A DNA stretch of 64,000 nt, taken from IMG/VR virus record IMGVR_UViG_3300036770_006296, positions 1 to 64,000 of that record. The stretch is one strand, 5' to 3'. Positions 14,881 through 51,249 of the stretch are shown in pieces. The notes under the pieces are model-generated. The model was given only the letters and a program-made list of their open reading frames with translations, searched no databases and had not been told where the DNA came from. Within the stretch, counting starts at the first letter, position 1, and each line of letters opens with the position of its first letter. The position numbers and the translations under genes were made by a program.

Positions 14881-16422
14881 ATGTTAAGATTTGTAGTAAG
14901 TGAAGATAATAATTGGTTAAGCTTAGTAGACTATTCAGAAGATTTTGAAAGAAAACAGATAGAAATATCTTTAACTAAGAAAATACACAACCATTTTTTT
15001 CATCCCCTTGTTAAGAAAAAACATTGGGATGGGTCTATATGCTTTGTGGATAAAAAATTACCCGTCTGGAGAGTTCCTATAGGTCTTTGGTCTGAGGTAT
15101 ATCAGATCTGCGAAAAATACAAGATAGAAGTAAACATTGAGGGATTAGAGAGATTAATAGATTCGGGTTTCACTCTAGAATCTTATACTGATTGGTGTAA
15201 CGAGTTCTTTAAAGATGGTGTCGGTGGAGATCCTAATAAAATGCCTAGGGATTACCAAATAGAAACAGCTTGGAAGATAATAAAATTTAAACTTTCAGTT
15301 TCAGAAGTTGCAACAAGCTCAGGTAAAACATTAATTGCTTTTATGGTAATGGCTTACCTAAAAGAGGTAATGAAAGTTAAGAAATTCTTAATGATTGTTC
15401 CTAATACGAATCTTGTTATACAGGGATCTGAAGATTTTGAAGAATATGGACTTGAAAAATTAGAGGACTGTGAAATTCAACAGATACATGGAGCAAATAA
15501 GAAAAAAATATCAGGGGGATTAATGATAGGAACATATCAATCCCTTGTAAAAATGGAACCCGAATTTTTTGATGATGTTGAAGCAGTTTTTGTTGATGAG
15601 TGTCACCAGGCACAAAGCGCATCTATAAAAAAGGTTGTTGCTGTATGTAAGGATTCTAAATGGAGATTTGGTTTATCCGGAACACTAGCAAATAAAAACA
15701 CTGCAGAATATTTGACCATCCAGCAATTCCTCGGTCCTCTTATAATGGAGATATCTCCTAAGTTTTTATTCGATAACAAATATGCTACCCCAGTTTCGAT
15801 TAAGATCGTAAAAATGGACTGGATGGATGACGAGATAAAAGAAAAGCTATCATCCCTTAAAGAGAACAAGACTGAAATGGAAGGTAATGAGATCTTTAAT
15901 CTGGAAAGAAAATTAGTTGTTGGTTCAGATAAAAGACTTAACTATATAATAGATTTTGTTCTCAAAACATCAAAGAACTCATTAATACTTTTCCAATCTG
16001 TTGGAGAAGGCTACGGCAAGAAGATTTATGATGGAATAAGGGAAAGAACTAATGATAGGGAGGTCTACTATATTGATGGGGATACCGATCCTGACAAAAG
16101 AGACATATTTACTAAGAGGATGGAGGAAGGAGTTAACAAAATAATGGTTGCTTCTTTTGGTACTATGTCCACTGGTATATCAGTAAAAAACATTCACAAT
16201 ATATTCTTAACCGAATCATATAAGTCGGAGGTACTTATAAAGCAGAGTTTAGGAAGGGGCATGAGATTGTTCGAGGGTAAGGAGAAAGTTAACATAATAG
16301 ATTTCGTAGATGATTTTGCTTGGGGCGGAAAAGAGAACTATTTGCTAAAGCATTCGAAGGAAAGAATAGAAATTTATAAAAGGGAACATTTCGATTATAA
16401 AATTTATAATGTCAAAATTTAG
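14881..16422 (+). CDS. uvsW: UvsW-like SF2 DNA helicase
   Basis: PRDYQ, ATSSGKT (Walker A), VDECH (motif II), LSGT, STGISVKNIHN and QSLGRGMR. Confidence 0.9.
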   Translation: MLRFVVSEDNNWLSLVDYSEDFERKQIEISLTKKIHNHFFHPLVKKKHWDGSICFVDKKLPVWRVPIGLWSEVYQICEKYKIEVNIEGLERLIDSGFTLESYTDWCNEFFKDGVGGDPNKMPRDYQIETAWKIIKFKLSVSEVATSSGKTLIAFMVMAYLKEVMKVKKFLMIVPNTNLVIQGSEDFEEYGLEKLEDCEIQQIHGANKKKISGGLMIGTYQSLVKMEPEFFDDVEAVFVDECHQAQSASIKKVVAVCKDSKWRFGLSGTLANKNTAEYLTIQQFLGPLIMEISPKFLFDNKYATPVSIKIVKMDWMDDEIKEKLSSLKENKTEMEGNEIFNLERKLVVGSDKRLNYIIDFVLKTSKNSLILFQSVGEGYGKKIYDGIRERTNDREVYYIDGDTDPDKRDIFTKRMEEGVNKIMVASFGTMSTGISVKNIHNIFLTESYKSEVLIKQSLGRGMRLFEGKEKVNIIDFVDDFAWGGKENYLLKHSKERIEIYKREHFDYKIYNVKI

Positions 16423-18362: not shown

Positions 18363-20365
18363 TGGCTGGAATAAAATATTTAACGGACATATACGAAAAA
18401 AAAGGAAAGTCCTTTATTGAAAGCCTTTTCAATAAAAATTTAACTGTAACGGAAAATCTAGACGGTCCTTCTTTTTCTTTTGAAAGAGATTTTACTGGCG
18501 ATAACATATCTTTCTATAAAAAGGATCAAGATAATCCTATAACCAAGGTGGATAGGATATTAATGAGATATTACGAAAAGCCCATAAGCTATATAGAATC
18601 TCTATCTCTTGAAATCACAGATCAACTTCCTAAGGGATGGAGATTCGGAATGGTTTACTTTCCTAACAAAAAGCCAGTCAGAATTGAATACGATAGGATA
18701 CCAAAGAATCATCTTGTTTTAACACATGTTGTTGTTAGGGATGAATTTGGTGATATCATTAAAAATTTACAGGATAGGAATGAGCTCGATGAATGGGCGG
18801 ACAAGCTAGGAGTTGAAAGATCACCTATTATATTCCAAGGTAAACTTGATAGGGATCAAAAGATAGCTATAATGGATTTCCTTTCCACCCCATTAGCAGA
18901 TCTTAAAAATAAATTCCAGACCTCTAGTTTTAGTAACTATCTAATTTCAATCTTAAATAAAAAAGTAGAAAGAACAACACTTGGTAAGGATTTACAAGGT
19001 GAGATAGATTCCCTAGTTTTTAGATTCGAGGATGAAGACGGAAAAGAGGAAACTGTTTTAGCAAAAATGGTTGACCCTATTTTTCATGAGATAAACAGAA
19101 GCAGAAAAGTTACTCAAACATCTTATTTTCCTAGTGATGTTTATTCTTTGTGTCTTATAGATGTAATGAATTTTATACTAGAGACAGGAGTAGAAAACTT
19201 TATGGCTGAAGGCAATGATCCAGAGGAAAGATACATCAGTTTTGTTTTTGATGTATTTAAGAAGTTTGTATACGAGGAGGGTGAGAAATATGTAGGTGCA
19301 GATTTTCAAAAACCAGAATACTTGAAAACCGAAGGATTTGAAATAAATAAGGATTTAATAACTGACGAAGAAATTTTAAAGTCTATAGAAGACGACGAAG
19401 TTTATATAGACATTCTACAAATGATCCTTAACTCTTTTAGAAAGCTTAAAAGAAAACCACATGGATTTTTTACAGAGGGGCTAATCCAGCAATTTAATAT
19501 GCTAGTTGAAGATATTGCTAGCTATATAAACGCCAAAAAGAAAGATTTAGTTGAAGAGTCTTTAGGAGTTCCCAGCTTTGTTTGGTTTAAAAAAGTCGGT
19601 AGTAAATTTAATCCGATAATGAGTGACGAGGATGAAATAGACGAACTAGAAGAAATCATAGAAGGTTCTTCTTCTGGAGATGTTCTACCTCTTAATGAAT
19701 CTGAAATCCCAGAGACTATAACTGAAGACGAGAAGAAAGAAGACGCTTCAGAATTTTTCTCATTTAAGGATTTTAAAAAGGTAGTAGCTACACACAAAGA
19801 AAAAAAGAAGATAAAGATATTAAACGAGAATAGCCAGAAGGTAAATATTGTAATAGGTAAATTTCAGCCATTTAACAATGGGCATTTAAAAATGTGTACA
19901 AGATTAAAGAAGGAAAACAATTTACCGGTATTTCTATGTGTAGTACATCCTGGAAGTGAGCCAGGATCTAAATATCCATTCTCTGAGGATTTAATAAAAA
20001 AATCTATAGGTGCTTTAACATCAGAGAACAACAAACTTTTTGCTGGATATGAAATAATTCCGTCCAACCTTTTGGAGGATGCTCTAAATGCAGTAGTAAA
20101 ACATGCTAATCCTGCTTCTATATGTATAGGGGAAAGGGATTTTGAAAATATGATTCTTCAAAGAGAATGGGTAAGAAATAAATATGATTTAGAAGGAGGA
20201 GATATAGAAATATACAAAACACCGCAATGGTCAAATAATAATGATATTAGAACCTATATAAAAGATGGGGATTTCCAGCAATTTAAAAGTAAAGTCCCTA
20301 AATCTGTAGCGGTTCTTTTCAATGAATTTACTAAACAAATAAACGGATCCGAGAAGGATATATAA
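18350..20365 (+). CDS. Fusion of an RNA-ligase-like nucleotidyltransferase fold (degenerate) and a HIGH-superfamily cytidyltransferase-like domain
   Basis: N-terminal VTENLDG in the position of ligase motif I (K-x-D-G), and later IDSLVFRF/LAKMVD. C-terminal IVIGKFQPFNNGH resembles GRFQPxHxGH. Confidence 0.6.
   Translation: MFKLMAGIKYLTDIYEKKGKSFIESLFNKNLTVTENLDGPSFSFERDFTGDNISFYKKDQDNPITKVDRILMRYYEKPISYIESLSLEITDQLPKGWRFGMVYFPNKKPVRIEYDRIPKNHLVLTHVVVRDEFGDIIKNLQDRNELDEWADKLGVERSPIIFQGKLDRDQKIAIMDFLSTPLADLKNKFQTSSFSNYLISILNKKVERTTLGKDLQGEIDSLVFRFEDEDGKEETVLAKMVDPIFHEINRSRKVTQTSYFPSDVYSLCLIDVMNFILETGVENFMAEGNDPEERYISFVFDVFKKFVYEEGEKYVGADFQKPEYLKTEGFEINKDLITDEEILKSIEDDEVYIDILQMILNSFRKLKRKPHGFFTEGLIQQFNMLVEDIASYINAKKKDLVEESLGVPSFVWFKKVGSKFNPIMSDEDEIDELEEIIEGSSSGDVLPLNESEIPETITEDEKKEDASEFFSFKDFKKVVATHKEKKKIKILNENSQKVNIVIGKFQPFNNGHLKMCTRLKKENNLPVFLCVVHPGSEPGSKYPFSEDLIKKSIGALTSENNKLFAGYEIIPSNLLEDALNAVVKHANPASICIGERDFENMILQREWVRNKYDLEGGDIEIYKTPQWSNNNDIRTYIKDGDFQQFKSKVPKSVAVLFNEFTKQINGSEKDI
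20357..20365 (+). promoter_or_regulatory. Putative late promoter GATATATAA overlapping the upstream stop codon
   Basis: The motif ends in the TAA of the preceding gene and precedes the peptidase gene. Confidence 0.55.
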
Positions 20366-20382: not shown

Positions 20383-21243
20383 ATGAAAAGAATATTATCC
20401 TTTAATGACTTTGCAATTTTTGAATATAACACTTTTAACTACACTCCAGGAGATAAGTTAAATGAAGCTATATACCTAGACGAAAGAGAGAAAAGACCAG
20501 TAGACGAAGCGGCACTCAAGAAAATGAAAGCCTGCGTGTTTTTCTTAAACGGATCTTATCCGTTTTTTTCATCAATGCTATCTAGATTGATAATCAGAGA
20601 AAACAGAAATCTTAGATTTAAAACAATGGCAACTGACGGTGTTAGTATACACTATGATCCTGATTTTGTAAATGAGCACAGCGATGCAGAGATAATGTGG
20701 GTAATAGCACATGAGGTTTTACATAATACTCTACTTCACTTCCTAAGATGCCCTAAAGATAAAACTAAAGCGGGTGTATGGAATGTTGCAGCAGATTATG
20801 CACTTAACCAGGTATTAACTCCGATAGACCCAGGAACAATAAACACCGCTAAACCTGAACCTGTATCTAAGGGAGGAGTAGGAAAAATGGTGAAGGGTTC
20901 TTTATATCCAGGATGCGGGCACGTTTCTTACGATCGTGAGTTTGTTAACAGAAGTGCAGAATGGATATACGAAAAACTTTTAGCTAATGGATATGTTCCT
21001 GAGCCAGGTGAAGATACACCACCACCCCCACCACCCCCACCACCTCCACAGGATCCTGTAGTTGGTGATATCATATATGATAAAGATAATGATTCTTATG
21101 GTATAATTAAATCTATAGACGATTCTTCAGGCGAGCTTGAGTATGATCCTATACCTAAAAATAAGGTTAAAGAATACTTACAAAGAAAAGCTAAGGGTGA
21201 GAATATATTGGGAGACGATATAGAAAAAGAATTAGACTTCTAA
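20383..21243 (+). CDS. DUF2201-N-like HExxH metallopeptidase (stand-alone N-half)
   Basis: TMATDG..IHYDPDFV, VIAHEVLHNTLLH and WNVAADYALNQ, then a poly-Pro linker and a short SH3/KOW-like C-terminus. CTS-like N-terminus MKRILSFNDF. Confidence 0.8.
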   Translation: MKRILSFNDFAIFEYNTFNYTPGDKLNEAIYLDEREKRPVDEAALKKMKACVFFLNGSYPFFSSMLSRLIIRENRNLRFKTMATDGVSIHYDPDFVNEHSDAEIMWVIAHEVLHNTLLHFLRCPKDKTKAGVWNVAADYALNQVLTPIDPGTINTAKPEPVSKGGVGKMVKGSLYPGCGHVSYDREFVNRSAEWIYEKLLANGYVPEPGEDTPPPPPPPPPPQDPVVGDIIYDKDNDSYGIIKSIDDSSGELEYDPIPKNKVKEYLQRKAKGENILGDDIEKELDF

Positions 21244-21256
21244 TTTAATACGTTCT

Positions 21257-22240
21257 ATGAAAGCTAAGATAACTGACGTTAAAATACAAAAACTCCAGGA
21301 AGATGGAGGAGGGGGAGGAGGAAAGGGCCCAAGGAATCCTAAAAATGTAGAAGTTTGGCCAGGAGATGTTAATGATGTACCGGATAGGGACGAAGATGGA
21401 AACATCAAAGGAGATGACGTAGAAGGAGATTTTAAAAGATATTCCGGACCTAAAACAGATCCTGGATATAATCCAGGAGAAGTACTTAGACCTGGAGAAT
21501 TAGGGGATGTTGGAGATGGTGGAAATATAGACCCAGATAAGATAGCTGAGGAATGGGATGATATAACTAGAATAGCAACCACGGGAGGAAGTGCTCAACC
21601 ACCTCCTTCTATAAGAAGAGCTTTAACTAAACTAAAAGAGCCTGTTATTGACTGGAGAGCTGAGTTGGATAAATTTATAGATCAGGCAATATCCAAATCT
21701 AAGTACACATTGCCGGTTAGAAGATTTTTAGGAGCTGGGAAAGCACAGTATGGATATAAGAAATATAAAGAGGATTTTCAAAATATAGTTATTGCTATAG
21801 ATACATCCGGTTCTATTATTGATCCTTTATTAAAACAATTTATTTCAGAGGTCATTAAAATAACCGAAATATACAAACCCGATGAAACGACAATAATATA
21901 TTGTAGCGACAATATAGATAATATAGATACATTCGGTGTGGGTGAAGAGCCAGATTTAAATAAGATAGCATCAACTGGAGGAAACTATGAAGGATTCCAT
22001 CCACCTTTTAAATGGGTACAAAAAAATATGATTGACGAGGGAAAAACACCTTCGGTTTTTATTTATTTTACTGATGGATATGCAGATTTTCCACCACCCG
22101 AATATTATGATATAGAGAATTATTCAGATAGGTGTATTTGGGTACTCATTTCTTTTAATGATGAACCATTTCCTAGACCCGTTCCTTTTGGTGAAAGAAT
22201 AGATATAGTTTTAGCCAATAATAACGTAAAAAGAATTTAA
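21257..22240 (+). CDS. VWA-domain protein (DUF2201 C-half-like), copy A
   Basis: IDWRAEL, MIDAS motif AIDTSGSI, and TGGN...IYFTDG. Confidence 0.8.
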   Translation: MKAKITDVKIQKLQEDGGGGGGKGPRNPKNVEVWPGDVNDVPDRDEDGNIKGDDVEGDFKRYSGPKTDPGYNPGEVLRPGELGDVGDGGNIDPDKIAEEWDDITRIATTGGSAQPPPSIRRALTKLKEPVIDWRAELDKFIDQAISKSKYTLPVRRFLGAGKAQYGYKKYKEDFQNIVIAIDTSGSIIDPLLKQFISEVIKITEIYKPDETTIIYCSDNIDNIDTFGVGEEPDLNKIASTGGNYEGFHPPFKWVQKNMIDEGKTPSVFIYFTDGYADFPPPEYYDIENYSDRCIWVLISFNDEPFPRPVPFGERIDIVLANNNVKRI

Positions 22241-22243
22241 TCT

Positions 22244-23251
22244 ATGAAAGCAAAAATAACAGGCGTAAGAATTCAGCAAATGAAAGAATCCGGTGGTGGT
22301 GGTGGGGGAGGAGACGTAGAGGGGGACGACTTCGGTATCAGAAATCCTGAAAATGTCGACGAGTGGAAAGACGATGTTCCTGATGGGGATACTCCTGAAA
22401 GAGACAAAGATGGTAAAATAAAAGAGGAGGATTCCGAGTTCAAAAGATCTGATAGATCCGGAGGTGGTGGAGGTCCAGCTCCTGACGGATACAATCCTGG
22501 TGAAGTTCTTAGACCTGGGGAGTTGGGGGATCTTGGTGGAGACAGTGGACTTAACGGAGAAGCATTAGCTGAAGAATGGGAAGATATTACTAGAATAGCT
22601 GCAGCAGCGGGTAACGTTCCAGCATCTATAAAAAGAGCACTGACCAAAGTTAAAAGACCTGTTATTGATTGGAAGGCTGAATTAGCTAAGTATATAGACG
22701 AGGCAATAGCTAAATCTAAATATACATTACCAGCTAGAAGATTTTTAGGAGCGGGAAAAGCACAATATGGATATAAGAAATACAAAGAGGATTTCGAAAG
22801 CGTGGTTGTTGCAATAGATACTTCCGGATCTATCACTAGAGAAATGATAGAACAATTTTTAGGGGAGGTTATGAATATAACACAAGCATATACCCCTAAG
22901 AAAACCATTATATTATACTGCGACACCCAAGTTTACGAGCCGGATATATTAGAGCCAGGAGACACTCCTGATTTTAATAAAATAGCCGGAGGTGGTGGAA
23001 CATATTTTTGGCCTCCATTCAAATGGGTAGAAAGAAATTTAATAGAAGAAGGCGAAAAACCGACAGTATTTATATACTTTACTGACGGTGAAGCAAACTT
23101 CCCGTCTGCGGATGACTATGAGATTTCTCAATATGAAAATAGATGTATTTGGGTATTTCTCACATTTAATGATGAACCCTATCCAAACCCGCAACCTTTT
23201 GGCGAGAGAATAGACATAGTACTTGCCAATAAGAATGTAAAAAGAATATAA
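22244..23251 (+). CDS. VWA-domain protein (DUF2201 C-half-like), copy B; tandem paralog
   Basis: AIDTSGSI, GGGGT.F and IYFTDG; long near-identical blocks shared with copy A (e.g. RRFLGAGKAQYGYKKYKEDF, YNPGEVLRPGELGD). Confidence 0.8.
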   Translation: MKAKITGVRIQQMKESGGGGGGGDVEGDDFGIRNPENVDEWKDDVPDGDTPERDKDGKIKEEDSEFKRSDRSGGGGGPAPDGYNPGEVLRPGELGDLGGDSGLNGEALAEEWEDITRIAAAAGNVPASIKRALTKVKRPVIDWKAELAKYIDEAIAKSKYTLPARRFLGAGKAQYGYKKYKEDFESVVVAIDTSGSITREMIEQFLGEVMNITQAYTPKKTIILYCDTQVYEPDILEPGDTPDFNKIAGGGGTYFWPPFKWVERNLIEEGEKPTVFIYFTDGEANFPSADDYEISQYENRCIWVFLTFNDEPYPNPQPFGERIDIVLANKNVKRI

Positions 23252-23257
23252 AAAGTA

Positions 23258-23266
23258 GATATATAA
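23258..23266 (+). promoter_or_regulatory. Putative late promoter GATATATAA
   Basis: Intergenic, before the AAA+ gene. Confidence 0.6.
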
Positions 23267-23284
23267 AGAAAATAAAAAAATAAA

Positions 23285-24889
23285 ATGGGCAAAAGAATTT
23301 ATAATTTTAACGAGTTTGTCAATGAATCCTATATGAGTGAGGGATTTTTCTCTGATTTGGGATCGAAAATATCATCATGGGCAAAAAGTTTATATAATGC
23401 AGTTAAGTCAGGATTAGTTAGATTGATATCATCAGGACCTAAGAAAGGAACCCCTAGGGTGGCATTGTTTGACGATAGCAAGAGTGATTCAATCTTAAAT
23501 CAGGTTAACAATTTCTACAAAGGTACTGAATTCTATAATATGAATAACCTTGAGATCCCTGAGACCCTTGAAGAAAGCTTCTTATGGGAAGATGCAGTTC
23601 CTTTAACTTATCCTATAGAAGACGACGTACCAAACTATTCTGAACAGGAGATAAAAGAGACTATTAAAAGAAACATGAGAGATATCTTTAGAATTGCAGA
23701 TGAAATGGAAGCAGCTAAAGAATCTGGAGCATCTGATGACGAGTTAGATGATATTTACAGAGGAATTCTAGATGTTAAACCAATATTCATATACGGAGCT
23801 CCAGGGATTGGTAAAACTCAAATAGTAGCCCAAGTTTGTGACGAATTAGGAAAAGAATTATACGGACATAAACTATCTTTAGTTAACGTAGATGGTGAGA
23901 ACGCAGAGCCTGTTGATTTTGCTGGGGTACCTAGTGTAGTAGATATTGAATCACCAAATGAAGAAAACCCAATTGGAAGAGGTGTTACCAGATCTAATAT
24001 TAATGTTGATATACTCCCTTATGATAACGGAAAAAATCAAAAAGGGGGAATCCTATTCATCGACGAGTTAAACCGTATGCCTAAAGAAGTTATTAAGATA
24101 TTTATGAAACTTGCTCAGTCCAGAAGAATCGGTAACAATTATAAGGTTCCTTCTAGATGGTATATCGTTGCAGCAGGTAACCGAAAAGAAGATGATAGAG
24201 GAAATATCGAAGAATTAGGTACTGCTCTTAGAGACAGATTCGAAGCTGTTAACTTTGTACCAACTATAAAAGGATTTAGAGGATATATCGAGGGAAGCAG
24301 ATACAAAGACGTTGTTCTTCCAGAGCTTCTAGATTTCTTAGAATTCCAGCCAGTATACTTCCATAATTTGGATCCGGCTCTTAAGAAAACAAAATATCCA
24401 ACTCCTAGGGCTTGGGTAGATGCTTCGAACTCTTTAAGAAGAGTTATTAGAGAATTGGAAGCTAAAGGAGTTACAAAGATTCCGGAAGATGTGATAAGAA
24501 AAGAATTCTCTAAAAATGTTGGATATGATGCAACATCAGCTTTCTTGAATTTCTACAAGATTGCTAAAGATATTCCAGTAAAAGATCTTATTCTACCTTA
24601 CACGGATCCCGATAAAGCTCCAGTTCCTGCGGATAAAGGGGATAGACCAGATTATACACACGCTTTATTTGGAGCGGTTATGAGAAAAAGCACAGAGATG
24701 CAATTAACACCTAAAGAGGTTTGTAATTATGCTAAATGGTTAGAAAGAATTGATAAAGAGGAAGAAGGAGCAGCACAGATTACAACTTTCTTTAAGCTTC
24801 ATCCAGAATTGGCAAAAGATCCTGCAATGTACTCTTGCTTAGGACCTTTGGCTGATAAATGGGGAGCTAAAGTTGGACAAGAGTTCTAA
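23285..24889 (+). CDS. MoxR-type AAA+ ATPase, locus 1
   Basis: Walker A GAPGIGKT, Walker B ILFIDE, AAGNR, ALRDRF and PTPRAW. CTS-like N-terminus IYNFNEFVNES. Confidence 0.85.
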   Translation: MGKRIYNFNEFVNESYMSEGFFSDLGSKISSWAKSLYNAVKSGLVRLISSGPKKGTPRVALFDDSKSDSILNQVNNFYKGTEFYNMNNLEIPETLEESFLWEDAVPLTYPIEDDVPNYSEQEIKETIKRNMRDIFRIADEMEAAKESGASDDELDDIYRGILDVKPIFIYGAPGIGKTQIVAQVCDELGKELYGHKLSLVNVDGENAEPVDFAGVPSVVDIESPNEENPIGRGVTRSNINVDILPYDNGKNQKGGILFIDELNRMPKEVIKIFMKLAQSRRIGNNYKVPSRWYIVAAGNRKEDDRGNIEELGTALRDRFEAVNFVPTIKGFRGYIEGSRYKDVVLPELLDFLEFQPVYFHNLDPALKKTKYPTPRAWVDASNSLRRVIRELEAKGVTKIPEDVIRKEFSKNVGYDATSAFLNFYKIAKDIPVKDLILPYTDPDKAPVPADKGDRPDYTHALFGAVMRKSTEMQLTPKEVCNYAKWLERIDKEEEGAAQITTFFKLHPELAKDPAMYSCLGPLADKWGAKVGQEF

Positions 24890-26083: not shown

Positions 26084-26263
26084 ATGGAAAATTACGAAAA
26101 AATCAAGGAATTAGTAGAAAGCATGTCTAAAGATATGGAAGCTTTTTACGTAAAAGGTAACAAGTCTGCTGGTACACGTGTAAGAACAGCTTGTCAAGAG
26201 CTTAAGAAATTAGCTCAAGATTTAAGAGTTAACGTACAAGAAACTAAAAACACCAAAGCTTAA
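26084..26263 (+). CDS. Histone H1-like (Hc1 family, short Bacteroidota type) protein; absent from the ORF track
   Basis: Translates as MENYEKIKELVESMSKDMEAFYVKGNKSAGTRVRTACQELKKLAQDLRVNVQETKNTKA (59 aa), with the GNKxAGTR.R signature. Confidence 0.75.
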   Translation: MENYEKIKELVESMSKDMEAFYVKGNKSAGTRVRTACQELKKLAQDLRVNVQETKNTKA

Positions 26264-26268
26264 TCTTT

Positions 26269-26499
26269 ATGAGTTACTATATTTGTAAAGTTAGCTTTTT
26301 TACTGGTGAGGTTTCTAAAAGTACTGGTAAGGCAAAGGCATCTAGATCTGAAATACTTGTAGAGGCGGAGAGTGTAACTGATGCTGAAGCAACTCTTCAC
26401 AAGCACTTAGCTGGTGATAATGCAACTGCTCATTTAGATTTCGAGGTTACTTCAGTAGCACAGTCTAAAATCGAGTCTGTAGTACAGATTAGAGGTTAA
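26269..26499 (+). CDS. DUF4494-like protein
   Basis: YYICKV...ILVEAESVTDAEA...FEVTSV pattern resembles the Bacteroidota/crAss-type DUF4494 family. Confidence 0.55.
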   Translation: MSYYICKVSFFTGEVSKSTGKAKASRSEILVEAESVTDAEATLHKHLAGDNATAHLDFEVTSVAQSKIESVVQIRG

Positions 26500-26506
26500 A
26501 AAACAT

Positions 26507-26541
26507 AATCCCCGATGATATATAATCTATCGGGGATTTTT
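26507..26541 (+). terminator. Intrinsic terminator hairpin with GATATATAA in its loop
   Basis: AATCCCCGAT (26507-26516) / ATCGGGGATT (26529-26538) is a perfect 10-bp inverted repeat followed by a T-run. Confidence 0.7.
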
Positions 26542-26564
26542 GTATTCCCTAATTAAATTAAACT

Positions 26565-28918: not shown

Positions 28919-30325
28919 ATGATCATAGATATTGAGAATACAGGAAATGGATTATCTGTTTCACATTACACTGAGGAAGGGGAAGTTAATTTATTGAAAA
29001 TTCAGGTACCAAAGCATCTACAATTTGTTTGGCAAAAAACATCGGAGAACGACAAAAGTAAAGATAAGGAATGGAGGTCATGGGACAATTTTCCTGTGAA
29101 GAAAGTCACCACTAGCAAGTTTGACAAATATAGAGTGGTAGAAATATTAGAAGCGATAGATCCCGAAATAACAAAACCACTTTGGGATTACCAAACTCCT
29201 AAAAAATACTTTGTCGATATAGAGGTTGAGATCACTGACAATCGTGCGGATTCTTTAGATACTGAAAATTCTAAGAACCGGGTGCTTTCAATAGGGATGG
29301 CTTCTTCTCACGGAAAGATTCTGGTTATTGGACTCGAAGATATTCCGCAGGATAAAATATTAAAAATAGAAAAAAGGATAAAGGAACACTTTAAGGATCA
29401 GCCAGGAGAATGGACTTTTAATTATAGGAAGTTCGAGACTGAGTTCGATATGCTTTACACTTTCTTCTCTAAGCTAGTTCCTAAAATGCCTTTAATAACT
29501 GGATGGAACTGGTTTGGGTATGACTGGCCTTATCTTATCAATCGAGCAAAAAGATTAGGAATAGATCCAAAGATAGCTTCACCCAGTGGGATTCTCTTAG
29601 GAATGAACCAGATTCCGATGCACATACTAATGGTTGACTACCTGGACATCTATAAGAAATGGGATAGGGTTATAAAAATCAGAGAATCTAACTCATTAGA
29701 CTATGTTGCTAATCAAGCTATAGGGATAAAAAAGATTTCTTATAACGGAACATTAAAAGATTTATATGAATCAGATTTTGAGACATTTATCTTTTATAAC
29801 GCAGTCGACTGTGCTTTAGTTCATTATATAGATAAAAGGCTGGACACGCTTTCAACTTTCTTTAAAATTGCCGAAGTTAGTAGAGTGGAAATAAACAGAG
29901 CCCTATCACCTGTGTGGACCACTGAGGTACTGATGCTAAGAAAATTCCTGGAAAGAAAAAGAGTTATTGTCAACGAGAGAAAAGGAGAATCACATGTAAA
30001 GTTTGAAGGAGCTTATGTTAAGAAGCCAGAAAAAGGATTATATGAATGGATCGCTTGTTTTGACTTTGCCTCACTATATCCTAACACGATGATGCAATGG
30101 GGAATTTCACCAGAGGCTTATATTGGGAAGAATTTAAAAGAAATACCAGAAGGTGCAATTAAAACATCTTCAGGTGCGGTGTTTTACAACAAAGATGGGC
30201 AAGAACCTATACTAAGAGAAATATTAAAAGGACTTTATGCACAAAGGAAAGCTACTAAGAAAAAATATTTTGAGTGTGAAAAGGAAATAGAAAAAATTAA
30301 AAAAGCAATAAAATCAAAATCATAA
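28919..30325 (+). CDS. polB: Family B DNA polymerase, N-terminal half (3'-5' exonuclease plus motif A)
   Basis: ExoI FVDIEVE, ExoII ITGWNWFGYDWPYL, ExoIII YNAVD and motif A FDFASLYP. Ends in the first fingers helix (LYAQRKATKKK); motifs B and C are absent. Confidence 0.9.
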   Translation: MIIDIENTGNGLSVSHYTEEGEVNLLKIQVPKHLQFVWQKTSENDKSKDKEWRSWDNFPVKKVTTSKFDKYRVVEILEAIDPEITKPLWDYQTPKKYFVDIEVEITDNRADSLDTENSKNRVLSIGMASSHGKILVIGLEDIPQDKILKIEKRIKEHFKDQPGEWTFNYRKFETEFDMLYTFFSKLVPKMPLITGWNWFGYDWPYLINRAKRLGIDPKIASPSGILLGMNQIPMHILMVDYLDIYKKWDRVIKIRESNSLDYVANQAIGIKKISYNGTLKDLYESDFETFIFYNAVDCALVHYIDKRLDTLSTFFKIAEVSRVEINRALSPVWTTEVLMLRKFLERKRVIVNERKGESHVKFEGAYVKKPEKGLYEWIACFDFASLYPNTMMQWGISPEAYIGKNLKEIPEGAIKTSSGAVFYNKDGQEPILREILKGLYAQRKATKKKYFECEKEIEKIKKAIKSKS

Positions 30326-34652: not shown

Positions 34653-35312
34653 ATGGAAGGAAAAAAGAATACCACTAAAAAAATAACAAACTTTAAAGAT
34701 TTCGTAAAAGATCACGGAGACATTGATGGTAAAGAAAATCTTGAAGAAATACCTTGTATAATTTTAGCTGGTCCTCCTGGGTGTGGCAAAGGAACACAAT
34801 CGAAAATAATATCTAAAGGTATGAGATGGAAACACGTTTCTACTGGCGATATATTAAGAGCTTCTGATGATAAAGAAATTAAAAAGATGATGAAGACTGG
34901 GGAATTACTTCCTGACGAATTAGTAGGAAAAGAACTAATCTCCTATCTTAAAGATTACTCTAAGCATCACGATCCTAAAGGATTTATATTTGATGGATAT
35001 CCAAGAAATCTTGCACAGAGAGATATTTTTGAAGAAATATGTAGAGTAAACAAATTAAAGCTTGTATATGTTTTCTTTTTAAACGGACCTGAGGATTTAT
35101 TAAAGAAGAGAATTATTAACCGAGGTAAATCATCGGGAAGATCAGACGACAAAAGCGAGAAAGCTTTTGAAAAAAGAATGAAAGAATATAATGAGCAGAC
35201 ACTTCCTATGATAGAATCAATGAGAAATGGTGGGAACTTTCTAGAAATATCTGCTACTAAAGATCTCGAGGATGTTTCTTCTTTAATATTTAAGAAATTG
35301 AATGAAATTTAA
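34653..35312 (+). CDS. adk: Adenylate kinase, short (LID-less) type, with an N-terminal extension
   Basis: GPPGCGKGTQ, HVSTGDILR, GFIFDGYPRN and GRSDD. The likely start is the ATG at 34653. Confidence 0.9.
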   Translation: MEGKKNTTKKITNFKDFVKDHGDIDGKENLEEIPCIILAGPPGCGKGTQSKIISKGMRWKHVSTGDILRASDDKEIKKMMKTGELLPDELVGKELISYLKDYSKHHDPKGFIFDGYPRNLAQRDIFEEICRVNKLKLVYVFFLNGPEDLLKKRIINRGKSSGRSDDKSEKAFEKRMKEYNEQTLPMIESMRNGGNFLEISATKDLEDVSSLIFKKLNEI

Positions 35313-41212: not shown

Positions 41213-41348
41213 TGCTTGTGCTATTAAAAAGGATATCTTTTATGGCTCTTGCTTTAGCTAGCGGGTTTTTTATCTATGCTCTTTTATTTCTGATAGAGTT
41301 TCCTAAAATAATTTCTGGTATTTTTTATTCTTTTAAAAAACATTAAAG

Positions 41349-47728: not shown

Positions 47729-47737
47729 GATATATAA
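47729..47737 (+). promoter_or_regulatory. Putative late promoter GATATATAA
   Basis: Intergenic, before AAA+ gene 2. Confidence 0.6.
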
Positions 47738-47756
47738 GATATCTAAAAAAATAAAG

Positions 47757-49250
47757 ATGTCTAAAAGAATAAAAAATTTCTCAGATTTTGTTAATGAATC
47801 ATACAGTCCTTCAAAATTAGACGAAGGGTTTCTTTCAACTATAAAGGATTATGCAAAAAGATTTTTTGGTTGGACTGGTAAATTTTTAAAGAGTCTAGCA
47901 CAGGGATTAATAGAGCCTATTCCTTATGGTCCTAAGAAAGGACTTCCTACTATTATGCTTTTCTTACCTGAAAATGGGTCTATCTACAAACAGATGACAG
48001 AATTTGAAATGGGTGTTAATCCTATAAAAGAAGCAAGGATACCTTTGGAATATACAGGAGAAGATCAGAGTGTAAGAAACATCTCTGCTGATCAATTAAA
48101 GCAAGATGTAATAAGATTATATAGAAGTAAAGAAAGAGGTGGTAGGGCTAAGCCTATCTTTATTTACGGAGCTCCTGGTATTGGTAAAACAGAAATAGTC
48201 GGACAAGCAGCTGATGAATTGGGTGTTCCGGTAATGAAGCTAGATTTACAATTTATGAATCCGGAGGATTTCTTAGGTATTCCTAGTAGACACGATATAG
48301 AGCCAGTTCAGGTAGAAGGTGGAAAATTGATTAGTTCAGGTAAAGGATTTACAAGATCTAATCCACCAATTTTACTTCCAACTGACAACGGTAATGAAGA
48401 TAGAGGAGGTATAATATTTATGGATGAGATGAACAGAGCTAATAAAGCAGTTCTTAACTCCATTATGCAATTTGTACAAAAAGGAGAAATAGGTCCTTAT
48501 AAATTACCAGATAGATGGGTGATTGTAGCAGCTGGTAACAGACCAGAAGAAGCTGAAGGTGTTGCTGATTTCGACTTTGCATTAGCAGACCGATTCACTA
48601 TTAAAAACTACGTCCCTACAATCGAGGGATATGCTTCTTGGGCTGATAAGAACGAAAAGATCCTTCCAGAGTTAGTTACTTTCTTAACGTTTAACCAAGA
48701 TTACTTCCATAATCTAGATGCCGATAAAAAATCTCTTAACTATCCTACGCCTAGATCTTGGACCGACGGAGCATTAATACTCCACGACGAGATCCAATAT
48801 AAAGGAGTAGATTCTTGGAGAGATATTTCTAGGCAAGATATATTAGACATCTTCTACGATCAAGTTGGTCCCGAAGCAGCTGGTAAATTTGTAGCTTACT
48901 TAGACATTTTAAGAAAAGTTACGGATTCTGATATGGAAGATATGATCAACAATCCTATGTCTGCTAAAATGGTACCAGAGGCACAATCCACAAAGAGCGT
49001 ACTTTATGGACTTATAGAAATGGTGATGAAGAGAGTTAAATCGTATGACACACAGAAATTCTATAACGTTATGGAGTATTTCAATAGATACAACGAGCTG
49101 GAACCGCTAAGCTGGCTATATAAAGATATCTTATCTAAATATCCTCAGTTCAAATTTGGAGGAAGTTCTAACACTCCGGAGGATGAATTAAAACACAAAG
49201 CAGCCTTAATGATTACAAAAGGAGCTAAAGATAAAGGTCTACAAGGATGA
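47757..49250 (+). CDS. MoxR-type AAA+ ATPase, locus 2
   Basis: GAPGIGKT, IIFMDE, AAGNR, ALADRF and PTPRSW; leader IKNFSDFVNES; shares a GPKKG-containing N-domain with the locus 1 ATPase. Confidence 0.85.
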   Translation: MSKRIKNFSDFVNESYSPSKLDEGFLSTIKDYAKRFFGWTGKFLKSLAQGLIEPIPYGPKKGLPTIMLFLPENGSIYKQMTEFEMGVNPIKEARIPLEYTGEDQSVRNISADQLKQDVIRLYRSKERGGRAKPIFIYGAPGIGKTEIVGQAADELGVPVMKLDLQFMNPEDFLGIPSRHDIEPVQVEGGKLISSGKGFTRSNPPILLPTDNGNEDRGGIIFMDEMNRANKAVLNSIMQFVQKGEIGPYKLPDRWVIVAAGNRPEEAEGVADFDFALADRFTIKNYVPTIEGYASWADKNEKILPELVTFLTFNQDYFHNLDADKKSLNYPTPRSWTDGALILHDEIQYKGVDSWRDISRQDILDIFYDQVGPEAAGKFVAYLDILRKVTDSDMEDMINNPMSAKMVPEAQSTKSVLYGLIEMVMKRVKSYDTQKFYNVMEYFNRYNELEPLSWLYKDILSKYPQFKFGGSSNTPEDELKHKAALMITKGAKDKGLQG

Positions 49251-50308
49251 GAAAGCTAAACGAAAACAAATATAAAACCGGAAAAGTAATAACATCTTTC
49301 TCTAATTATGTTAGATTCATAAACGAATCATCCTTATATGATCCGGATGAGGTCAACAAAAAAATAAGAAGGGTTATACTTTGGTTAAATATAAACCAGG
49401 GATTTTATGCTGAGCTTCTTAGCCATGTAAATATATTTGGATCTAGCGATCTTAATCCTAAAACAATGTGTACAAACGGTAGGGATATAATATTCCATCC
49501 TGAATTTGTTATGAGACAATCTGAGCCAGCTTTGAGATTTGTCCTTTGTCATGAAATATTACATTGCATAGGTGATCATATGAATAGGAGAGGAAGCAGA
49601 GATCCTATGGGATGGAACATAGCTTGTGACTATGCAATAAATCCATTACTCAAGGATGAAGCCGGATTCGAATTTCCCGTAGATGAAAACGGTAATAGAG
49701 AAGGATTATATGATTCAAGGTTCGAAGGGATGAGGGCAGAAGACATATATGATGCACTAGAAGAATCAGGAGAACTGAAAAAATTAATAGGAGACTCTAA
49801 AGTACAAAAGACTGTAGAGACTACAGGTAAAGTTGAAGATGAGGATAAAGAATTAGCAGACCCTGACGAAGAAATGGTGATACAAAAAGGGGATGACCCA
49901 GGAGAAGAGGGAGAAGATGGAGAACCAGGAGAAGATGGAGAACCAGGAGAAGATGGAGAGCCAGGAGAAGATGGAGAACCAGGAGATCAGCCAGGAGATC
50001 AGCCAGGAGATCAACCAGGAGATCAACCAGGAGATCAACCAGGAGATCAACCAGGAGACCAGCCAGGAGATCAACCAGGAGATCAACCAGGAGATCAACC
50101 AGGAGATCAACCAGGAGATCAACCAGGAGATCAACCAGGAGATCAACCAGGAGATCAACCAGGAGATCAACCAGGAGATCAACCAGGAGATCAACCGGGT
50201 GGAGATAAAAAGAGTCTTCCAAGAGTTGGCCAGAAGGTAATAACAAAAGACGGAAGGGAAGGAACTATAACTAAGGTTTATCCTAACGGAGATATAGAAA
50301 TTTCTTAA
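49247..50308 (+). CDS. DUF2201-N-like HExxH metallopeptidase (stand-alone N-half) with a repeat linker, locus 2
   Basis: TMCTNG..I.FHPEFV, VLCHEILHC..DH and WNIACDYAINP, then (GEDGEP)4(GDQP)18 and an SH3/KOW-like C-terminus. Confidence 0.8.
   Translation: MRKLNENKYKTGKVITSFSNYVRFINESSLYDPDEVNKKIRRVILWLNINQGFYAELLSHVNIFGSSDLNPKTMCTNGRDIIFHPEFVMRQSEPALRFVLCHEILHCIGDHMNRRGSRDPMGWNIACDYAINPLLKDEAGFEFPVDENGNREGLYDSRFEGMRAEDIYDALEESGELKKLIGDSKVQKTVETTGKVEDEDKELADPDEEMVIQKGDDPGEEGEDGEPGEDGEPGEDGEPGEDGEPGDQPGDQPGDQPGDQPGDQPGDQPGDQPGDQPGDQPGDQPGDQPGDQPGDQPGDQPGDQPGDQPGDQPGDQPGGDKKSLPRVGQKVITKDGREGTITKVYPNGDIEIS
49910..50197 (+). repeat. In-frame tandem repeats: 4 x 18 nt (GEDGEP) then 18 x 12 nt (GDQP)
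   Basis: Units ggagaagatggagaacca (49910-49981) and ggagatcaacca (49982-50197), with only synonymous variation. Confidence 0.95.
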
Positions 50309-50310
50309 TT

Positions 50311-51249
50311 ATGTTTATAAAAAACGGAGATTATTCAGTAGTATCTGACGACAAGAATAAAGAAAATGGAAAACCTGGGGATCAAAGAAAATCTTCTGGA
50401 GGAGAGGCCGAATTTTCAGATACCCCTGAGACAATGACTGACATACCTAAAGTGGGTCAAGAAACTCCTGGTATAAAAACATTCAGAGATTTTGAGGGAC
50501 CACAAGATTCCAAGGAAAAAGCTAAAGAGATAAAACCTAATAAGCCATCTAAAATATTTAAGGGTGATCTTCCAAAAAGAAATTGGCAGGATATAGCTAA
50601 TCAGGCTATGTCTAGAAATAAAGTTAGTGACAAAGCTAAAAGACTAATAAAAGCTTTAAAAACCAGTGAGCCTTTAGTTGATTGGAAGAAAGAGCTTAAA
50701 AAATTCTTTGATAACACTTTTAAATCCGATGAATGGGTTCTTCCTAATAAAAGATTCCTTGCTGGAGGTGACATGATATACGGGAGAAGAAACGTAGGTG
50801 ATGACACTTTAAAAACTATAGTTGCCGCAGTTGATACATCTTCATCTATTTCAAAAGAACAGATAAAGGTATTTATCAACGAAATAATGTATCTCACAAA
50901 AACATTTGATGCTGATAAAACTATAATCATATACTGTAGTGATCATATAGACAATATTGATATAGTTAAAAAGGGAGGATCTCCAGATCTAACAAAGATA
51001 GCTTCAACCGGTGGAAACGCGGAAGGATTTATACCGCCATTTCAGTGGGTAGAAAAAAATAAGATCAAGCCATCCGCATTTATTTATTTAACAGACACAG
51101 GAGGAGAAATGCCAGACCCTAGTAAATATGGTATAAATAAATACAGAAAGAAGGTGCTTTGGTTTATATGTTCTCCTGAAATGTATAATCCACCATCCTT
51201 CGGCAAGATACTTTTTGCCCCTGTGGGATCCATAAAAGTTAAAAGATAG
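50311..51249 (+). CDS. VWA-domain protein (DUF2201 C-half-like), locus 2
   Basis: VDWKKEL, AVDTSSSI, TGGNAEGF and IYLTD. Confidence 0.8.
   Translation: MFIKNGDYSVVSDDKNKENGKPGDQRKSSGGEAEFSDTPETMTDIPKVGQETPGIKTFRDFEGPQDSKEKAKEIKPNKPSKIFKGDLPKRNWQDIANQAMSRNKVSDKAKRLIKALKTSEPLVDWKKELKKFFDNTFKSDEWVLPNKRFLAGGDMIYGRRNVGDDTLKTIVAAVDTSSSISKEQIKVFINEIMYLTKTFDADKTIIIYCSDHIDNIDIVKKGGSPDLTKIASTGGNAEGFIPPFQWVEKNKIKPSAFIYLTDTGGEMPDPSKYGINKYRKKVLWFICSPEMYNPPSFGKILFAPVGSIKVKR

What the first reader, a model, noticed from the sequence alone, without database searches (positions are those of the whole stretch)
20383..24889. Putative virion-packaged split metallopeptidase / twin VWA / MoxR AAA+ machine (locus 1)
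MoxR AAA+ genes normally pair with a VWA partner, and DUF2201-type proteins are single chains with an HExxH peptidase, a linker and a VWA domain. Here that protein is split into one peptidase gene (HEVLH) and two VWA genes (intact DTSGS MIDAS), followed by the ATPase. The peptidase and the ATPase have their own late-type promoters and capsid-tag-like leaders. This suggests an ATP-driven remodelling/proteolytic complex with exchangeable substrate adaptors, carried inside the head and possibly injected. The archaeal virus ATV uses a virion-associated MoxR/VWA pair, but this tagged, split, three-component form in a tailed jumbo phage is not something I can match to a described system.
Basis: partly seen in the sequence, partly recalled or inferred. 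Interest (0 to 1): 0.85.

Follow-up and report, generated by a model that had tools for sequence, protein, structure and literature searches.

The report
Split MoxR–VWA–peptidase module with capsid-tag leaders
An uncultured jumbo phage carries a known phage ATPase/adaptor/protease module in a split and duplicated form, and two of its parts bear a short N-terminal tag, resembling phage T4's capsid-targeting signal, that marks about a quarter of the genes here, so the machine may be loaded into the phage head.

Summary
Four co-oriented genes at 20383-24889 encode a zincin peptidase (HEVLH), two VWA proteins (DTSGS) and a MoxR-like AAA+ ATPase with intact motifs. The split is real: it recurs at a second locus (47757-51249), in about 80 protein clusters and in many independent assemblies. 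The twin VWA recurs in at least five assemblies but not in all close relatives.

The module is not new. It is the N4 gp24/gp25-type pair, and Iyer et al. 2021 already described it in jumbo phages and made the ATV analogy. The new features are the gene fission, the two loci, the mosaic second VWA and cassette-like exchange.

The peptidase and ATPase, but not the VWAs, each follow a conserved GATATATA element and start with a leader ([FY]-x-[DEQ]-F-[VIL]-N-E). About 18 of 69 window ORFs carry this leader. In related phages GATATATA precedes portal, prohead-protease and tail genes. The leader heads the small protein between portal and protease and resembles T4 ipII/ipIII.

Loading into the head is therefore plausible (about 0.5) but unproven. 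Injection is speculative. Verdict: a new variant of a known kind, of moderate interest.

The parts
20357..20364 (+). GATATATA promoter-like element of the peptidase-VWA1-VWA2 transcription unit. It overlaps the stop codon of the upstream gene.
   Evidence: The window has 15 sites, all in gene sense, and 13 lie just upstream of a start codon. This site is conserved in 6 of 6 relatives. In related phages the same element precedes portal, protease and tail operons.
20383..21243 (+). Stand-alone zincin peptidase (the N-terminal catalytic part of DUF2201). Parts: leader aa 1-14 (FNDFAIFE); catalytic domain aa ~30-205 with HEVLHNTLLH (aa 110-119) and WNVAAD (aa 133-138); a run of 10 Pro (aa 213-222); a small C-terminal beta-domain (aa 230-270).
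   Evidence: Pfam PF13203 E=2.7e-18 and phrog_1314 positions 11-154. Invariant residues from alignment A1. AF2 model pLDDT 86, with a disordered leader. Foldseek finds minigluzincin/SprT-like cores in PDB and phage DUF2201 proteins in BFVD.
21257..22240 (+). VWA1, the extra VWA-like adaptor paralog. It has no leader and no promoter of its own. MIDAS is DTSGS...STGGN...FTDG. Its central ~65 residues are locus-2-like, so it is a mosaic.
   Evidence: PF09967 E=1.7e-12. Alignment and sliding-window identity. Orthologs at 78-87% identity occur in twin-VWA loci of at least 5 assemblies.
22244..23251 (+). VWA2, the VWA-like adaptor that is orthologous to the single VWA gene of most relatives. MIDAS DTSGS...GGGT...FTDG is intact. 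It has a conserved basic C-terminal tail.
   Evidence: PF09967 E=1.1e-18 and phrog_1314 positions 172-390. It is 68-83% identical to the single VWA of L002-L006.
23258..23265 (+). GATATATA promoter-like element of the ATPase transcription unit.
   Evidence: It is conserved in 6 of 6 relatives even though the intergenic region has diverged and shifted.
23285..24889 (+). MoxR-like AAA+ ATPase. Parts: leader aa 1-14 (FNEFVNE), then a clade-specific N-terminal extension of ~165 aa, the AAA+ core and a helical C-terminal domain.
   Evidence: AAA_5 and phrog_1297. Motifs. AF2 pLDDT 81, best TM-scores to NorQ and CbbQ2. The family has more than 1,100 clusters, and 98 of the top 120 carry the leader.
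47729..51249 (+). Paralogous locus 2: GATATATA (47729-47736), ATPase 2 (47757-49250, with leader), peptidase 2 (49247-50308, leader after ~15 aa, HEILHCIGDH), and VWA 3 (50311-51249, DTSSS, no leader).
   Evidence: It is conserved in L014, L015, L016 and L019 and deleted in L020.

Best explanation
What it is. Locus 1 is a lineage-specific variant of the conserved phage MoxR-like AAA+ ATPase / DUF2201 (zincin peptidase-linker-VWA) module, the N4 gp24/gp25 type. In this clade of uncultured, probably Bacteroidota-infecting jumbo phages the DUF2201 gene has split in its disordered linker. One gene now encodes the peptidase and another the VWA protein. The whole module exists at two loci. In this sub-lineage locus 1 also carries a second, mosaic VWA gene.

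How it works, inferred by analogy with NorQ-NorD and CbbQ-CbbO. One VWA protein docks on the ATPase hexamer, and its MIDAS face binds an acidic residue of a target. ATP hydrolysis pulls or twists the adaptor and the target. The zincin, recruited in trans, cuts the remodelled target. VWA1 and VWA2 would be alternative adaptors.

Where it acts, inferred. The peptidase and the ATPase are transcribed from their own GATATATA promoters, the class that drives head and tail genes in related phages. Each starts with a ~14-residue leader that most likely acts as a T4-type capsid-targeting propeptide. The leader would deliver the protein to the prohead core and be removed after the Glu of [VIL]-x-E by a gp21-type prohead protease. 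The untagged VWA proteins would enter only by binding their partners.

Shown versus inferred. Shown: the sequence features, their conservation, their distribution and their genomic context. Inferred: packaging, cleavage, complex formation and the substrates.
For: Identity of the module:
- Pfam and PHROG hits.
- Adjacent ATPase plus fused DUF2201 in N4-like CB1, cyanophage S-TIM5 and LR756500.1.
- Iyer et al. 2021.
- ATPase fold closest to NorQ and CbbQ2. NorQD mechanism.

The fission is real and widespread:
- Locus 2.
- About 80 PF13203-only clusters.
- Relatives.

Catalytic, MIDAS and Walker motifs are intact.

Leader:
- Enriched at N-termini.
- Conserved at protein level, with synonymous codon variation.
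- Disordered in both AF2 models.
- Present on 98 of the 120 top ATPase clusters and across the split peptidase family.
- Present on 32-57 of 671 ORFs of LR756500.1, against 1 of 473 internal control segments.
- The strict core hits only ipII, ipIII and gp61.1 among 201 T4 proteins.
- It ends in x-X-Glu, as do sites cut by T4-type prohead proteases.
- It heads the ~115-aa protein between portal and prohead protease in about 20 of 20 head loci.
- LR756500.1 has a gp21-like protease, and its module sits next to a gp14-like neck gene.

Promoter:
- Positional specificity and conservation.
- Association with the leader, Fisher p = 8e-4.
- It precedes 23 of 39 protease genes, 15 of 44 portal genes and a tail operon.
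Against: - There is no proteomic or other direct evidence of packaging or cleavage.
- In N4-like phages the homologous pair are middle genes and were not found in virions. The ancestral role is therefore probably intracellular.
- The VWA proteins have no leader.
- A leader-like N-terminus also sits on an adenylate kinase, and on about a quarter of ORFs in a region rich in replication genes.
- The unbiased window-trained HMM ranks the T4 internal proteins poorly (E = 7-18).
- The regex test left open a position that is always Asn here but Ala/Lys in T4.
- The window's own head genes and prohead protease could not be retrieved. The link to head morphogenesis therefore rests on related phages.
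- Locus 2 is deleted in one close relative, so at least that copy is dispensable.
Confidence: 0.5

Rival explanations
1. The module is a purely intracellular assembly chaperone/processing protease, as Iyer et al. proposed for jumbo phages and as N4 middle-gene expression implies. It helps fold, assemble or trim virion or replication proteins in the infected cell and is never packaged. On this reading the shared leader has another role. It could be a docking tag for a phage-encoded chaperone (this phage has a DnaJ-like gene), a tag for a phage-made compartment, or a degron.
For: - N4 gp24 and gp25 are core genes, are middle transcripts, and are absent from the virion MS lists.
- S-TIM5 and N4-like homologs lack any leader.
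- The VWA subunits are untagged.
- An adenylate kinase carries a leader-like extension.
- Iyer et al. proposed this role.
Against: - The leader occurs together with T4-type head genes rather than with the module. T4 has the leader without the module, and N4 has the module without the leader.
- The leader heads the protein in the prohead-core gene slot.
- It ends in a prohead-protease-type site.
- Leader genes share the head and tail promoter.
Confidence: 0.33
2. The leader is the recognition tag of the module itself. Leader-bearing proteins would be substrates whose acidic leader is bound by the VWA MIDAS site and cut off by the DUF2201 zincin, with the ATPase driving turnover.
For: - MIDAS sites bind carboxylates, and the leader has conserved acidic residues.
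- Many leader genes cluster around both loci.
Against: - Leader and module have different phyletic distributions.
- T4 uses the same kind of leader with the serine protease gp21 and has no DUF2201.
- One relative has lost locus 2 but keeps its leader genes.
Confidence: 0.07
3. The split and the twin VWA are artefacts (frameshift or assembly errors at the poly-Pro and poly-Gly tracts) or decaying pseudogenes.
For: Homopolymeric codon tracts (10 Pro; 6-7 Gly) flank the junctions.
Against: - The same gene boundaries occur in dozens of independent assemblies and at a second locus.
- VWA N-termini (MKAKIT...) and peptidase C-terminal domains are conserved.
- All motifs are intact.
- The proteins have diverged by 13-40% and stayed open, which indicates purifying selection.
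Confidence: 0.01

Closest known systems
N4 gp24 (AAA+ ATPase) / gp25 (vWFA, DUF2201) pair of Schitoviridae, and the 'MoxR-vWA with N-terminal metallopeptidase' pair of group 2.2 jumbo phages (Iyer et al. 2021)
   Same: - Homologous ATPase (phrog_1297) and peptidase-VWA (phrog_1314) encoded side by side.
- The same catalytic, MIDAS and Walker motifs.
   Different: - Here the peptidase and VWA are separate genes.
- There are two loci, and a twin, mosaic VWA.
- The ATPase has a ~165-aa N-terminal extension.
- The ATPase and peptidase carry an N-terminal leader and have their own late-type promoters.
- N4's genes are middle genes without any leader.
NorQ-NorD and CbbQ-CbbO (MoxR AAA+ with a VWA adaptor)
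   Same: - They are the best structural matches of the ATPase (TM 0.53-0.59).
- The partner is a VWA protein with a MIDAS site.
- The likely mode of action is the same: one VWA per hexamer, and remodelling of the linker N-terminal to the VWA domain.
   Different: - Sequence similarity is low. No NCBIfam hit was found, and the Pfam AAA_3 and bpMoxR hits are below threshold.
- Those systems insert metals or reactivate enzymes and have no peptidase.
T4 capsid-targeting sequence of internal proteins IPII/IPIII (and IPI, Alt)
   Same: - An extreme N-terminal motif of ~10-16 residues shared by otherwise unrelated proteins.
- Core [FY]-x-[EQD]-F-[ILV]-x-E, ending in a Glu that fits prohead-protease cleavage.
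- Genes scattered and fast-evolving.
   Different: - This is similarity of a short motif only. Asn is invariant here where T4 has Ala/Lys.
- The HMM test was weak.
- The tag is on far more genes (about 25% of the window, 5-8% of LR756500.1) and on large enzymes.
- Function is untested.
ATV p618 (MoxR) / p892 (VWA), virion-associated chaperones of an archaeal virus
   Same: A MoxR-type ATPase plus a VWA protein encoded by a virus and linked to virion morphogenesis (cited).
   Different: - ATV has no peptidase domain.
- Homology to the ATV proteins was not tested here.
- The host domain and virion type are different.
Shigella phage pSb-1 stand-alone metallopeptidase (V5UNV5, 153 aa)
   Same: A peptidase-only DUF2201_N protein in a cultured N4-like phage, so fission of the fused gene has happened elsewhere.
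   Different: - It is much shorter, with no leader and no C-terminal beta-domain.
- Its genomic context was not examined.

Membership tests
MoxR-class AAA+ ATPase | Walker A, Walker B, sensor 1, Arg finger and sensor 2 are present | tested here: met
   GAPGIGKT, ILFIDE, AAGN, LRDRF and PTPR are invariant in alignment A2.
MoxR-class AAA+ ATPase | Family-specific profile match (Pfam AAA_3 or bpMoxR; NCBIfam) | tested here: inconclusive
   AAA_5 is above its cut-off. For ATPase 2, bpMoxR scores 25.7 and AAA_3 24.1, both below the 27-bit cut-offs. No NCBIfam hit was found. Some homologs carry precomputed AAA_3 or bpMoxR hits.
MoxR-class AAA+ ATPase | Fold closest to solved MoxR proteins, with beta-hairpin inserts | tested here: met
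   The best TM-scores and RMSD are to NorQ and CbbQ2. The model has hairpins at aa 215-238, before Walker B.
MoxR-class AAA+ ATPase | Encoded next to a VWA partner | tested here: met
   True at both loci and in all relatives.
DUF2201 (PF13203 + PF09967) peptidase-VWA protein | HExxH zincin domain with the family's invariant residues | tested here: met
   TMATDG, H110, E111, H114, H119, R122, W133, N134, D138 and N142 are invariant in 51 sequences.
DUF2201 (PF13203 + PF09967) peptidase-VWA protein | VWA-like domain with MIDAS DxSxS...T...D | tested here: met
   VWA2 has DTSGS, GGGT and FTDG. VWA1 and VWA3 have Asn in the aligned Thr column, in an S-T-G-G-N context.
DUF2201 (PF13203 + PF09967) peptidase-VWA protein | Both domains on one polypeptide | tested here: not met
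   The genes are separate at both loci and in about 80 clusters. This is a fission variant.
T4-type capsid-targeting sequence (CTS) | A 10-20-residue N-terminal motif shared by otherwise unrelated proteins | tested here: met
   About 18 of 69 window ORFs and 32-57 of 671 LR756500.1 ORFs carry it. It is absent internally.
T4-type capsid-targeting sequence (CTS) | Sequence resemblance to the T4 IP leaders | tested here: inconclusive
   The strict core picks ipII, ipIII and gp61.1 among 201 T4 proteins. The window-trained HMM gives only E = 7-18 for the IPs.
T4-type capsid-targeting sequence (CTS) | Ends in a prohead-protease site (x-X-Glu), and the genome encodes a gp21-type protease | tested here: inconclusive
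   The leaders end in [VIL]-N-E. A gp21-like protease is present in LR756500.1 and in related head loci. It could not be retrieved for the window's own genome.
T4-type capsid-targeting sequence (CTS) | The tagged protein is found in the capsid with its leader removed | not testable with these tools
   This needs virion proteomics or N-terminal sequencing.
ATV p618/p892-type virion MoxR-VWA chaperone | Homology to p618/p892 and association with virions | not tested
   The analogy comes from the literature only.

The most novel reading that the evidence does not exclude
This jumbo-phage clade uses a T4-like capsid-targeting leader to load a large, diverse cargo into the head. The cargo would include a complete ATP-driven remodelling protease: a MoxR hexamer, a zincin, and interchangeable VWA adaptors that ride in by binding. 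The phage would eject this cargo with the DNA as a programmable host-takeover or anti-defence machine. The VWA paralogs, and the exchange of whole cassettes between phages, would set target specificity.
Probability: 0.17. Interest if true: 0.85.

Novelty: new variant of a known kind. Interest (0 to 1): 0.55.

Why it matters
The MoxR/DUF2201 pair is one of the most conserved phage gene pairs with no known function. It is core in N4-like phages and widespread in jumbo phages and cyanophages.

A natural fission variant separates the catalytic subunit from the adaptor. It also supplies two adaptor paralogs and two loci. Together these make a ready-made genetic dissection of the machine, and they point to the VWA MIDAS face as the variable part that determines specificity.

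Independently, the leader and the GATATATA element define a predicted regulon of head-targeted proteins in a large uncultured phage clade. If that is confirmed, three things follow:
- T4's capsid-targeting mechanism would extend to distant jumbo phages.
- The contents of their capsids could be predicted from sequence alone.
- A portable packaging tag for large enzymes would become available.

Tried and rejected
- Megablast of the locus and of 25 kb of the window against GenBank phages found no match.
- PADLOC and NCBIfam gave nothing specific.
- PDB sequence searches found no homolog for the peptidase or VWA.
- The literature holds no characterization of DUF2201.
- The window-trained leader HMM against T4 did not rank the internal proteins highly. 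I kept this as evidence against the CTS reading and did not discard it.
- The idea of an mRNA-level leader was rejected, because codons vary synonymously and the motif's offset from the start codon varies.
- Recent gene conversion as the source of the VWA1 mosaic was rejected, because DNA identity is only ~70-72%.
- My earlier conclusion that the twin VWA is unique to this genome was withdrawn.
- The upstream walk by exact-protein look-up failed twice. Walking with the search for related loci reached only tail and baseplate genes.
- Loci L129-L146 turned out to be ordinary T4-like phages without leaders.
- The k-mer search for a shared promoter in LR756500.1 returned only paralogous upstream repeats.
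- A scan with the L179 protease did not retrieve the window's contig.
- tblastn with two other leader proteins found no cultured-phage homolog annotated as a virion protein.


Full report
**1. Observation**

- 20383-21243 (286 aa) matches the N-terminal, catalytic part of Pfam DUF2201_N (profile positions 10-134 of 271). It carries HEVLHNTLLH at aa 110-119.
- 21257-22240 (327 aa) and 22244-23251 (335 aa) match the last third of DUF2201_N plus the VWA-like DUF2201 domain. Each has DTSGS.
- 23285-24889 (534 aa) is an AAA_5/AAA ATPase.

PHROGs shows the same picture. The peptidase covers positions 11-154 of phrog_1314 and the VWA proteins cover 172-390. That family is mislabelled 'HNH endonuclease'; it is the fused DUF2201 family. 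The ATPase belongs to phrog_1297. Walker A, Walker B, sensor 1, the Arg finger and sensor 2 are all intact.

In a 51-sequence alignment all invariant residues of the peptidase family lie inside the peptidase ORF: TMATDG, H110, E111, H114, H119, R122, W133, N134, D138 and N142.

**2. The split is real and widespread; the module is known**

A second locus in the same window has the same fission in a different gene order: ATPase 47757-49250, peptidase 49247-50308, VWA 50311-51249.

The window is the first 64 kb of a 206.6-kb IMG/VR contig. Relatives keep the separate genes at both loci. A search of 5.8 billion proteins found about 80 clusters of peptidase-only proteins, on contigs up to 347 kb. 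The fused forms are more distant.

The fused pair sits next to its ATPase in N4-like phages (N4 gp24/gp25), in cyanophage S-TIM5 and in the 462-kb uncultured phage LR756500.1.

Iyer et al. 2021 already described a MoxR + (metallopeptidase-vWA) chaperone pair in jumbo phages. They proposed a role in virion assembly and processing and cited the ATV precedent. In N4-like phages gp24 and gp25 are two of 14 core genes. They are middle transcripts and are not among the virion proteins found by mass spectrometry. A peptidase-only homolog also exists in the cultured phage pSb-1.

The basic system is therefore known. The fission, the duplication and the tagging are what is new.

**3. Twin VWA and cassette behaviour**

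Five IMG/VR relatives have a single VWA gene, orthologous to VWA2. VWA1-type genes at 78-87% identity occur in at least five other independent assemblies, always in the order peptidase-VWA1-VWA2-ATPase.

VWA1 is a mosaic. Residues ~195-260, which include the MIDAS-loop segment STGGN, are 70-73% identical to the locus-2 VWA and only 33-47% identical to VWA2. The flanking parts are of locus-1 type. DNA identity is only ~70-72%, so this is not a recent conversion.

The locus has a history different from its flanks.
- L003 and L004 have flanking genes 93-98% identical to the window, but their cassette is 80-83% identical and has a single VWA.
- L021 and L023 have flanks at 77-88%, but their cassette is 86-90% identical and has the twin VWA.
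- In one close relative locus 2 is deleted down to a 140-aa remnant.

This is how exchangeable accessory cassettes behave.

**4. Structure and likely mechanism**

The peptidase model (pLDDT 86) has these parts:
- a disordered leader;
- a confident zincin core;
- a poly-Pro linker;
- a small C-terminal beta-domain.

Against the PDB it matches only minimal zincin cores: selecase, jannalysin and SPRTN. Against BFVD it matches phage DUF2201 proteins.

The ATPase model (pLDDT 81) also has a disordered leader, followed by a clade-specific N-terminal extension. Its core is closest to NorQ (TM 0.53-0.59) and CbbQ2 (TM 0.59).

In NorQ-NorD one VWA domain docks on the hexamer. A VWA finger enters the pore, the VWA C-terminus touches the post-sensor-1 loop, and the ATPase twists the linker N-terminal to the VWA domain.

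By analogy, VWA1 and VWA2 would be mutually exclusive adaptors of one motor. The long acidic, Gly-rich N-terminal linker of the VWA proteins would be the element that is pulled. How the separate peptidase is recruited is unknown. Its C-terminal beta-domain and the conserved VWA N-terminus (MKAKIT...) are candidate contacts; this is inference.

**5. Promoter**

GATATATA occurs 15 times in the window, always in gene sense. Thirteen sites lie 4-40 nt upstream of a start codon. The sites upstream of the peptidase, ATPase 1 and ATPase 2 are perfectly conserved in every relative, although the surrounding sequence has diverged. No VWA gene has one. Locus 1 is therefore two transcription units.

The same element heads the large tail/baseplate operon just upstream of the window in a 95%-identical relative. 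In 45 head-gene loci of the broader clade, 100 of 145 sites lie 45 nt or less upstream of a co-oriented start. The element precedes 23 of 39 prohead-protease genes and 15 of 44 portal genes. 'Late-type promoter' is thus a well-supported inference.

**6. Leader**

About 18 of 69 window ORFs begin with h-x-x-[FY]-x-[DEQ]-F-[VIL]-N-E. The strict core occurs at 7 N-termini and nowhere internally in 17,674 residues. Codons vary synonymously, so selection acts on the protein.

Leader genes are associated with GATATATA (8 of 12 genes with the element against 9 of 57 without, p = 8e-4). The gene starting at 62866 adds a further case.

The leader is on 98 of the top 120 ATPase clusters and across the split peptidase family. 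It is absent from the N4-like, S-TIM5 and cellular homologs.

In the complete genome of LR756500.1, 32-57 of 671 ORFs carry it (MKYI[KQ]EYE[ED]F[IL]xE), against 1 of 473 internal control segments. These genes form clusters of small paralogs. That genome has a gp21-like protease, a portal, gp4 and gp14, and its module lies next to the gp14-like gene.

T4 ipII and ipIII begin MKTYQEFIAEA in the database record. The window-derived core hits only ipII, ipIII and gp61.1 among 201 T4 proteins. An unbiased HMM does not rank them highly.

T4-type CTSs are 10-20-residue propeptides, and T4-type prohead proteases cut after Glu.

In head modules of the clade, the ~115-aa protein between portal and protease starts with the leader in essentially all 20 loci. 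That is the slot of T4 gp67/gp68.

Leader and module have different distributions: T4 has the leader only, and N4 has the module only. This argues that the leader belongs to the head-assembly system and not to the MoxR machine.

**7. Verdict**

- The module's identity and the fission are firm.
- Late-class transcription is well supported by context.
- Head targeting through a CTS-like leader is the best current reading (about 0.5) but rests on motif similarity and on context in related phages.
- Ejection and host targets are speculation.

This is a new variant of a known kind. The most interesting by-product is the predicted regulon of leader-tagged proteins.

Noticed in passing
window 16459, 25165, 25694, 36615, 39331, 42740, 51251, 52626, 57239(-), 58015, 58505, 60712, 62866 (gene starts): A family-independent N-terminal leader (h-x-x-[FY]-x-[DEQ]-F-[VIL]-N-E) heads about a quarter of the window's ORFs. 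Most of these have no database match. In 58505 and 60712 the leader starts at an internal Met, so their annotated starts are probably too far upstream.
   Followed up: yes
window 28919-30325 and 46516-47685: The family-B DNA polymerase is encoded as two separate genes 16 kb apart (N-terminal half phrog_2062, C-terminal half phrog_1918). In relative L020 the C-terminal half is further interrupted by a 380-aa ORF. LR756500.1 also has the polymerase in several pieces.
   Followed up: partly
window 34653-35312: An adenylate kinase (PF00406, E = 2e-32) has a ~30-aa N-terminal extension with a degenerate leader (KKITNFKDFVKD). A nucleotide kinase would be an odd capsid cargo. This is either a decayed tag or a hint that the leader has a wider role.
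   Followed up: no
window 58015-58521: Immediately after its leader, this protein has a sub-threshold match to the fusellovirus VP2 family of virion DNA-binding proteins (PF25632, E = 9e-5, 23 bits against a cut-off of 27). It is 63% identical, leader included, to a protein of the 642-kb phage LR756502.1.
   Followed up: partly
window 26084-26263 and 26269-26499: Precomputed Pfam hits on the orthologs suggest a chlamydial Hc1-type histone-like protein (PF07432) and a DUF4494 protein just downstream of locus 1.
   Followed up: no
window 8583, 39318, 42728 (GATATATA sites): At three genes the promoter-like element ends only 4-5 nt before the ATG. These transcripts would be leaderless or nearly so. 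At the other genes the spacer is 17-21 nt.
   Followed up: no
window 26510-26545: One GATATATA copy sits in the loop of a perfect hairpin (CCCCGAT...ATCGGGG) followed by a T-run. It looks like a terminator that contains the promoter motif.
   Followed up: no
L004:1296-4084 (relative of window 14881-16422): In one relative the replicative helicase gene is interrupted by a 289-aa ORF, an intein- or homing-endonuclease-like insertion, which splits it into 336-aa and 312-aa parts.
   Followed up: no
L020:7950-8372: Locus 2 is deleted in a close relative. The remnant is an in-frame 140-aa ORF that joins the first ~76 aa of ATPase 2 (with leader) to the last ~72 aa of the VWA protein.
   Followed up: yes
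window 41213-42386: This is a DnaJ-type J-domain protein. The ORF called from its first ATG starts inside the domain (HPD motif near its N-terminus), so the true start lies upstream. Phage-encoded DnaJ/DnaK were reported for the aquatic 'moraphage' lineage of Bacteroidota jumbo phages (PMC12619734), which may be related.
   Followed up: no
window 42740-44287: This leader protein has a disordered Gly/Ser/Thr-rich linker. Its C-terminal domain (aa ~322-469, phrog_3000) is shared with crAss-like and Pseudoalteromonas phages, and one of those homologs is annotated as peptidoglycan-binding.
   Followed up: partly
T4 (NC_000866) 18966-19130, gene 61.1: The uncharacterized 54-aa T4 protein gp61.1 starts MKTFKEFIKED. 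It was the best T4 match to the leader HMM and is very close to the ipI-III leaders. It may be an unrecognized CTS-bearing protein.
   Followed up: no
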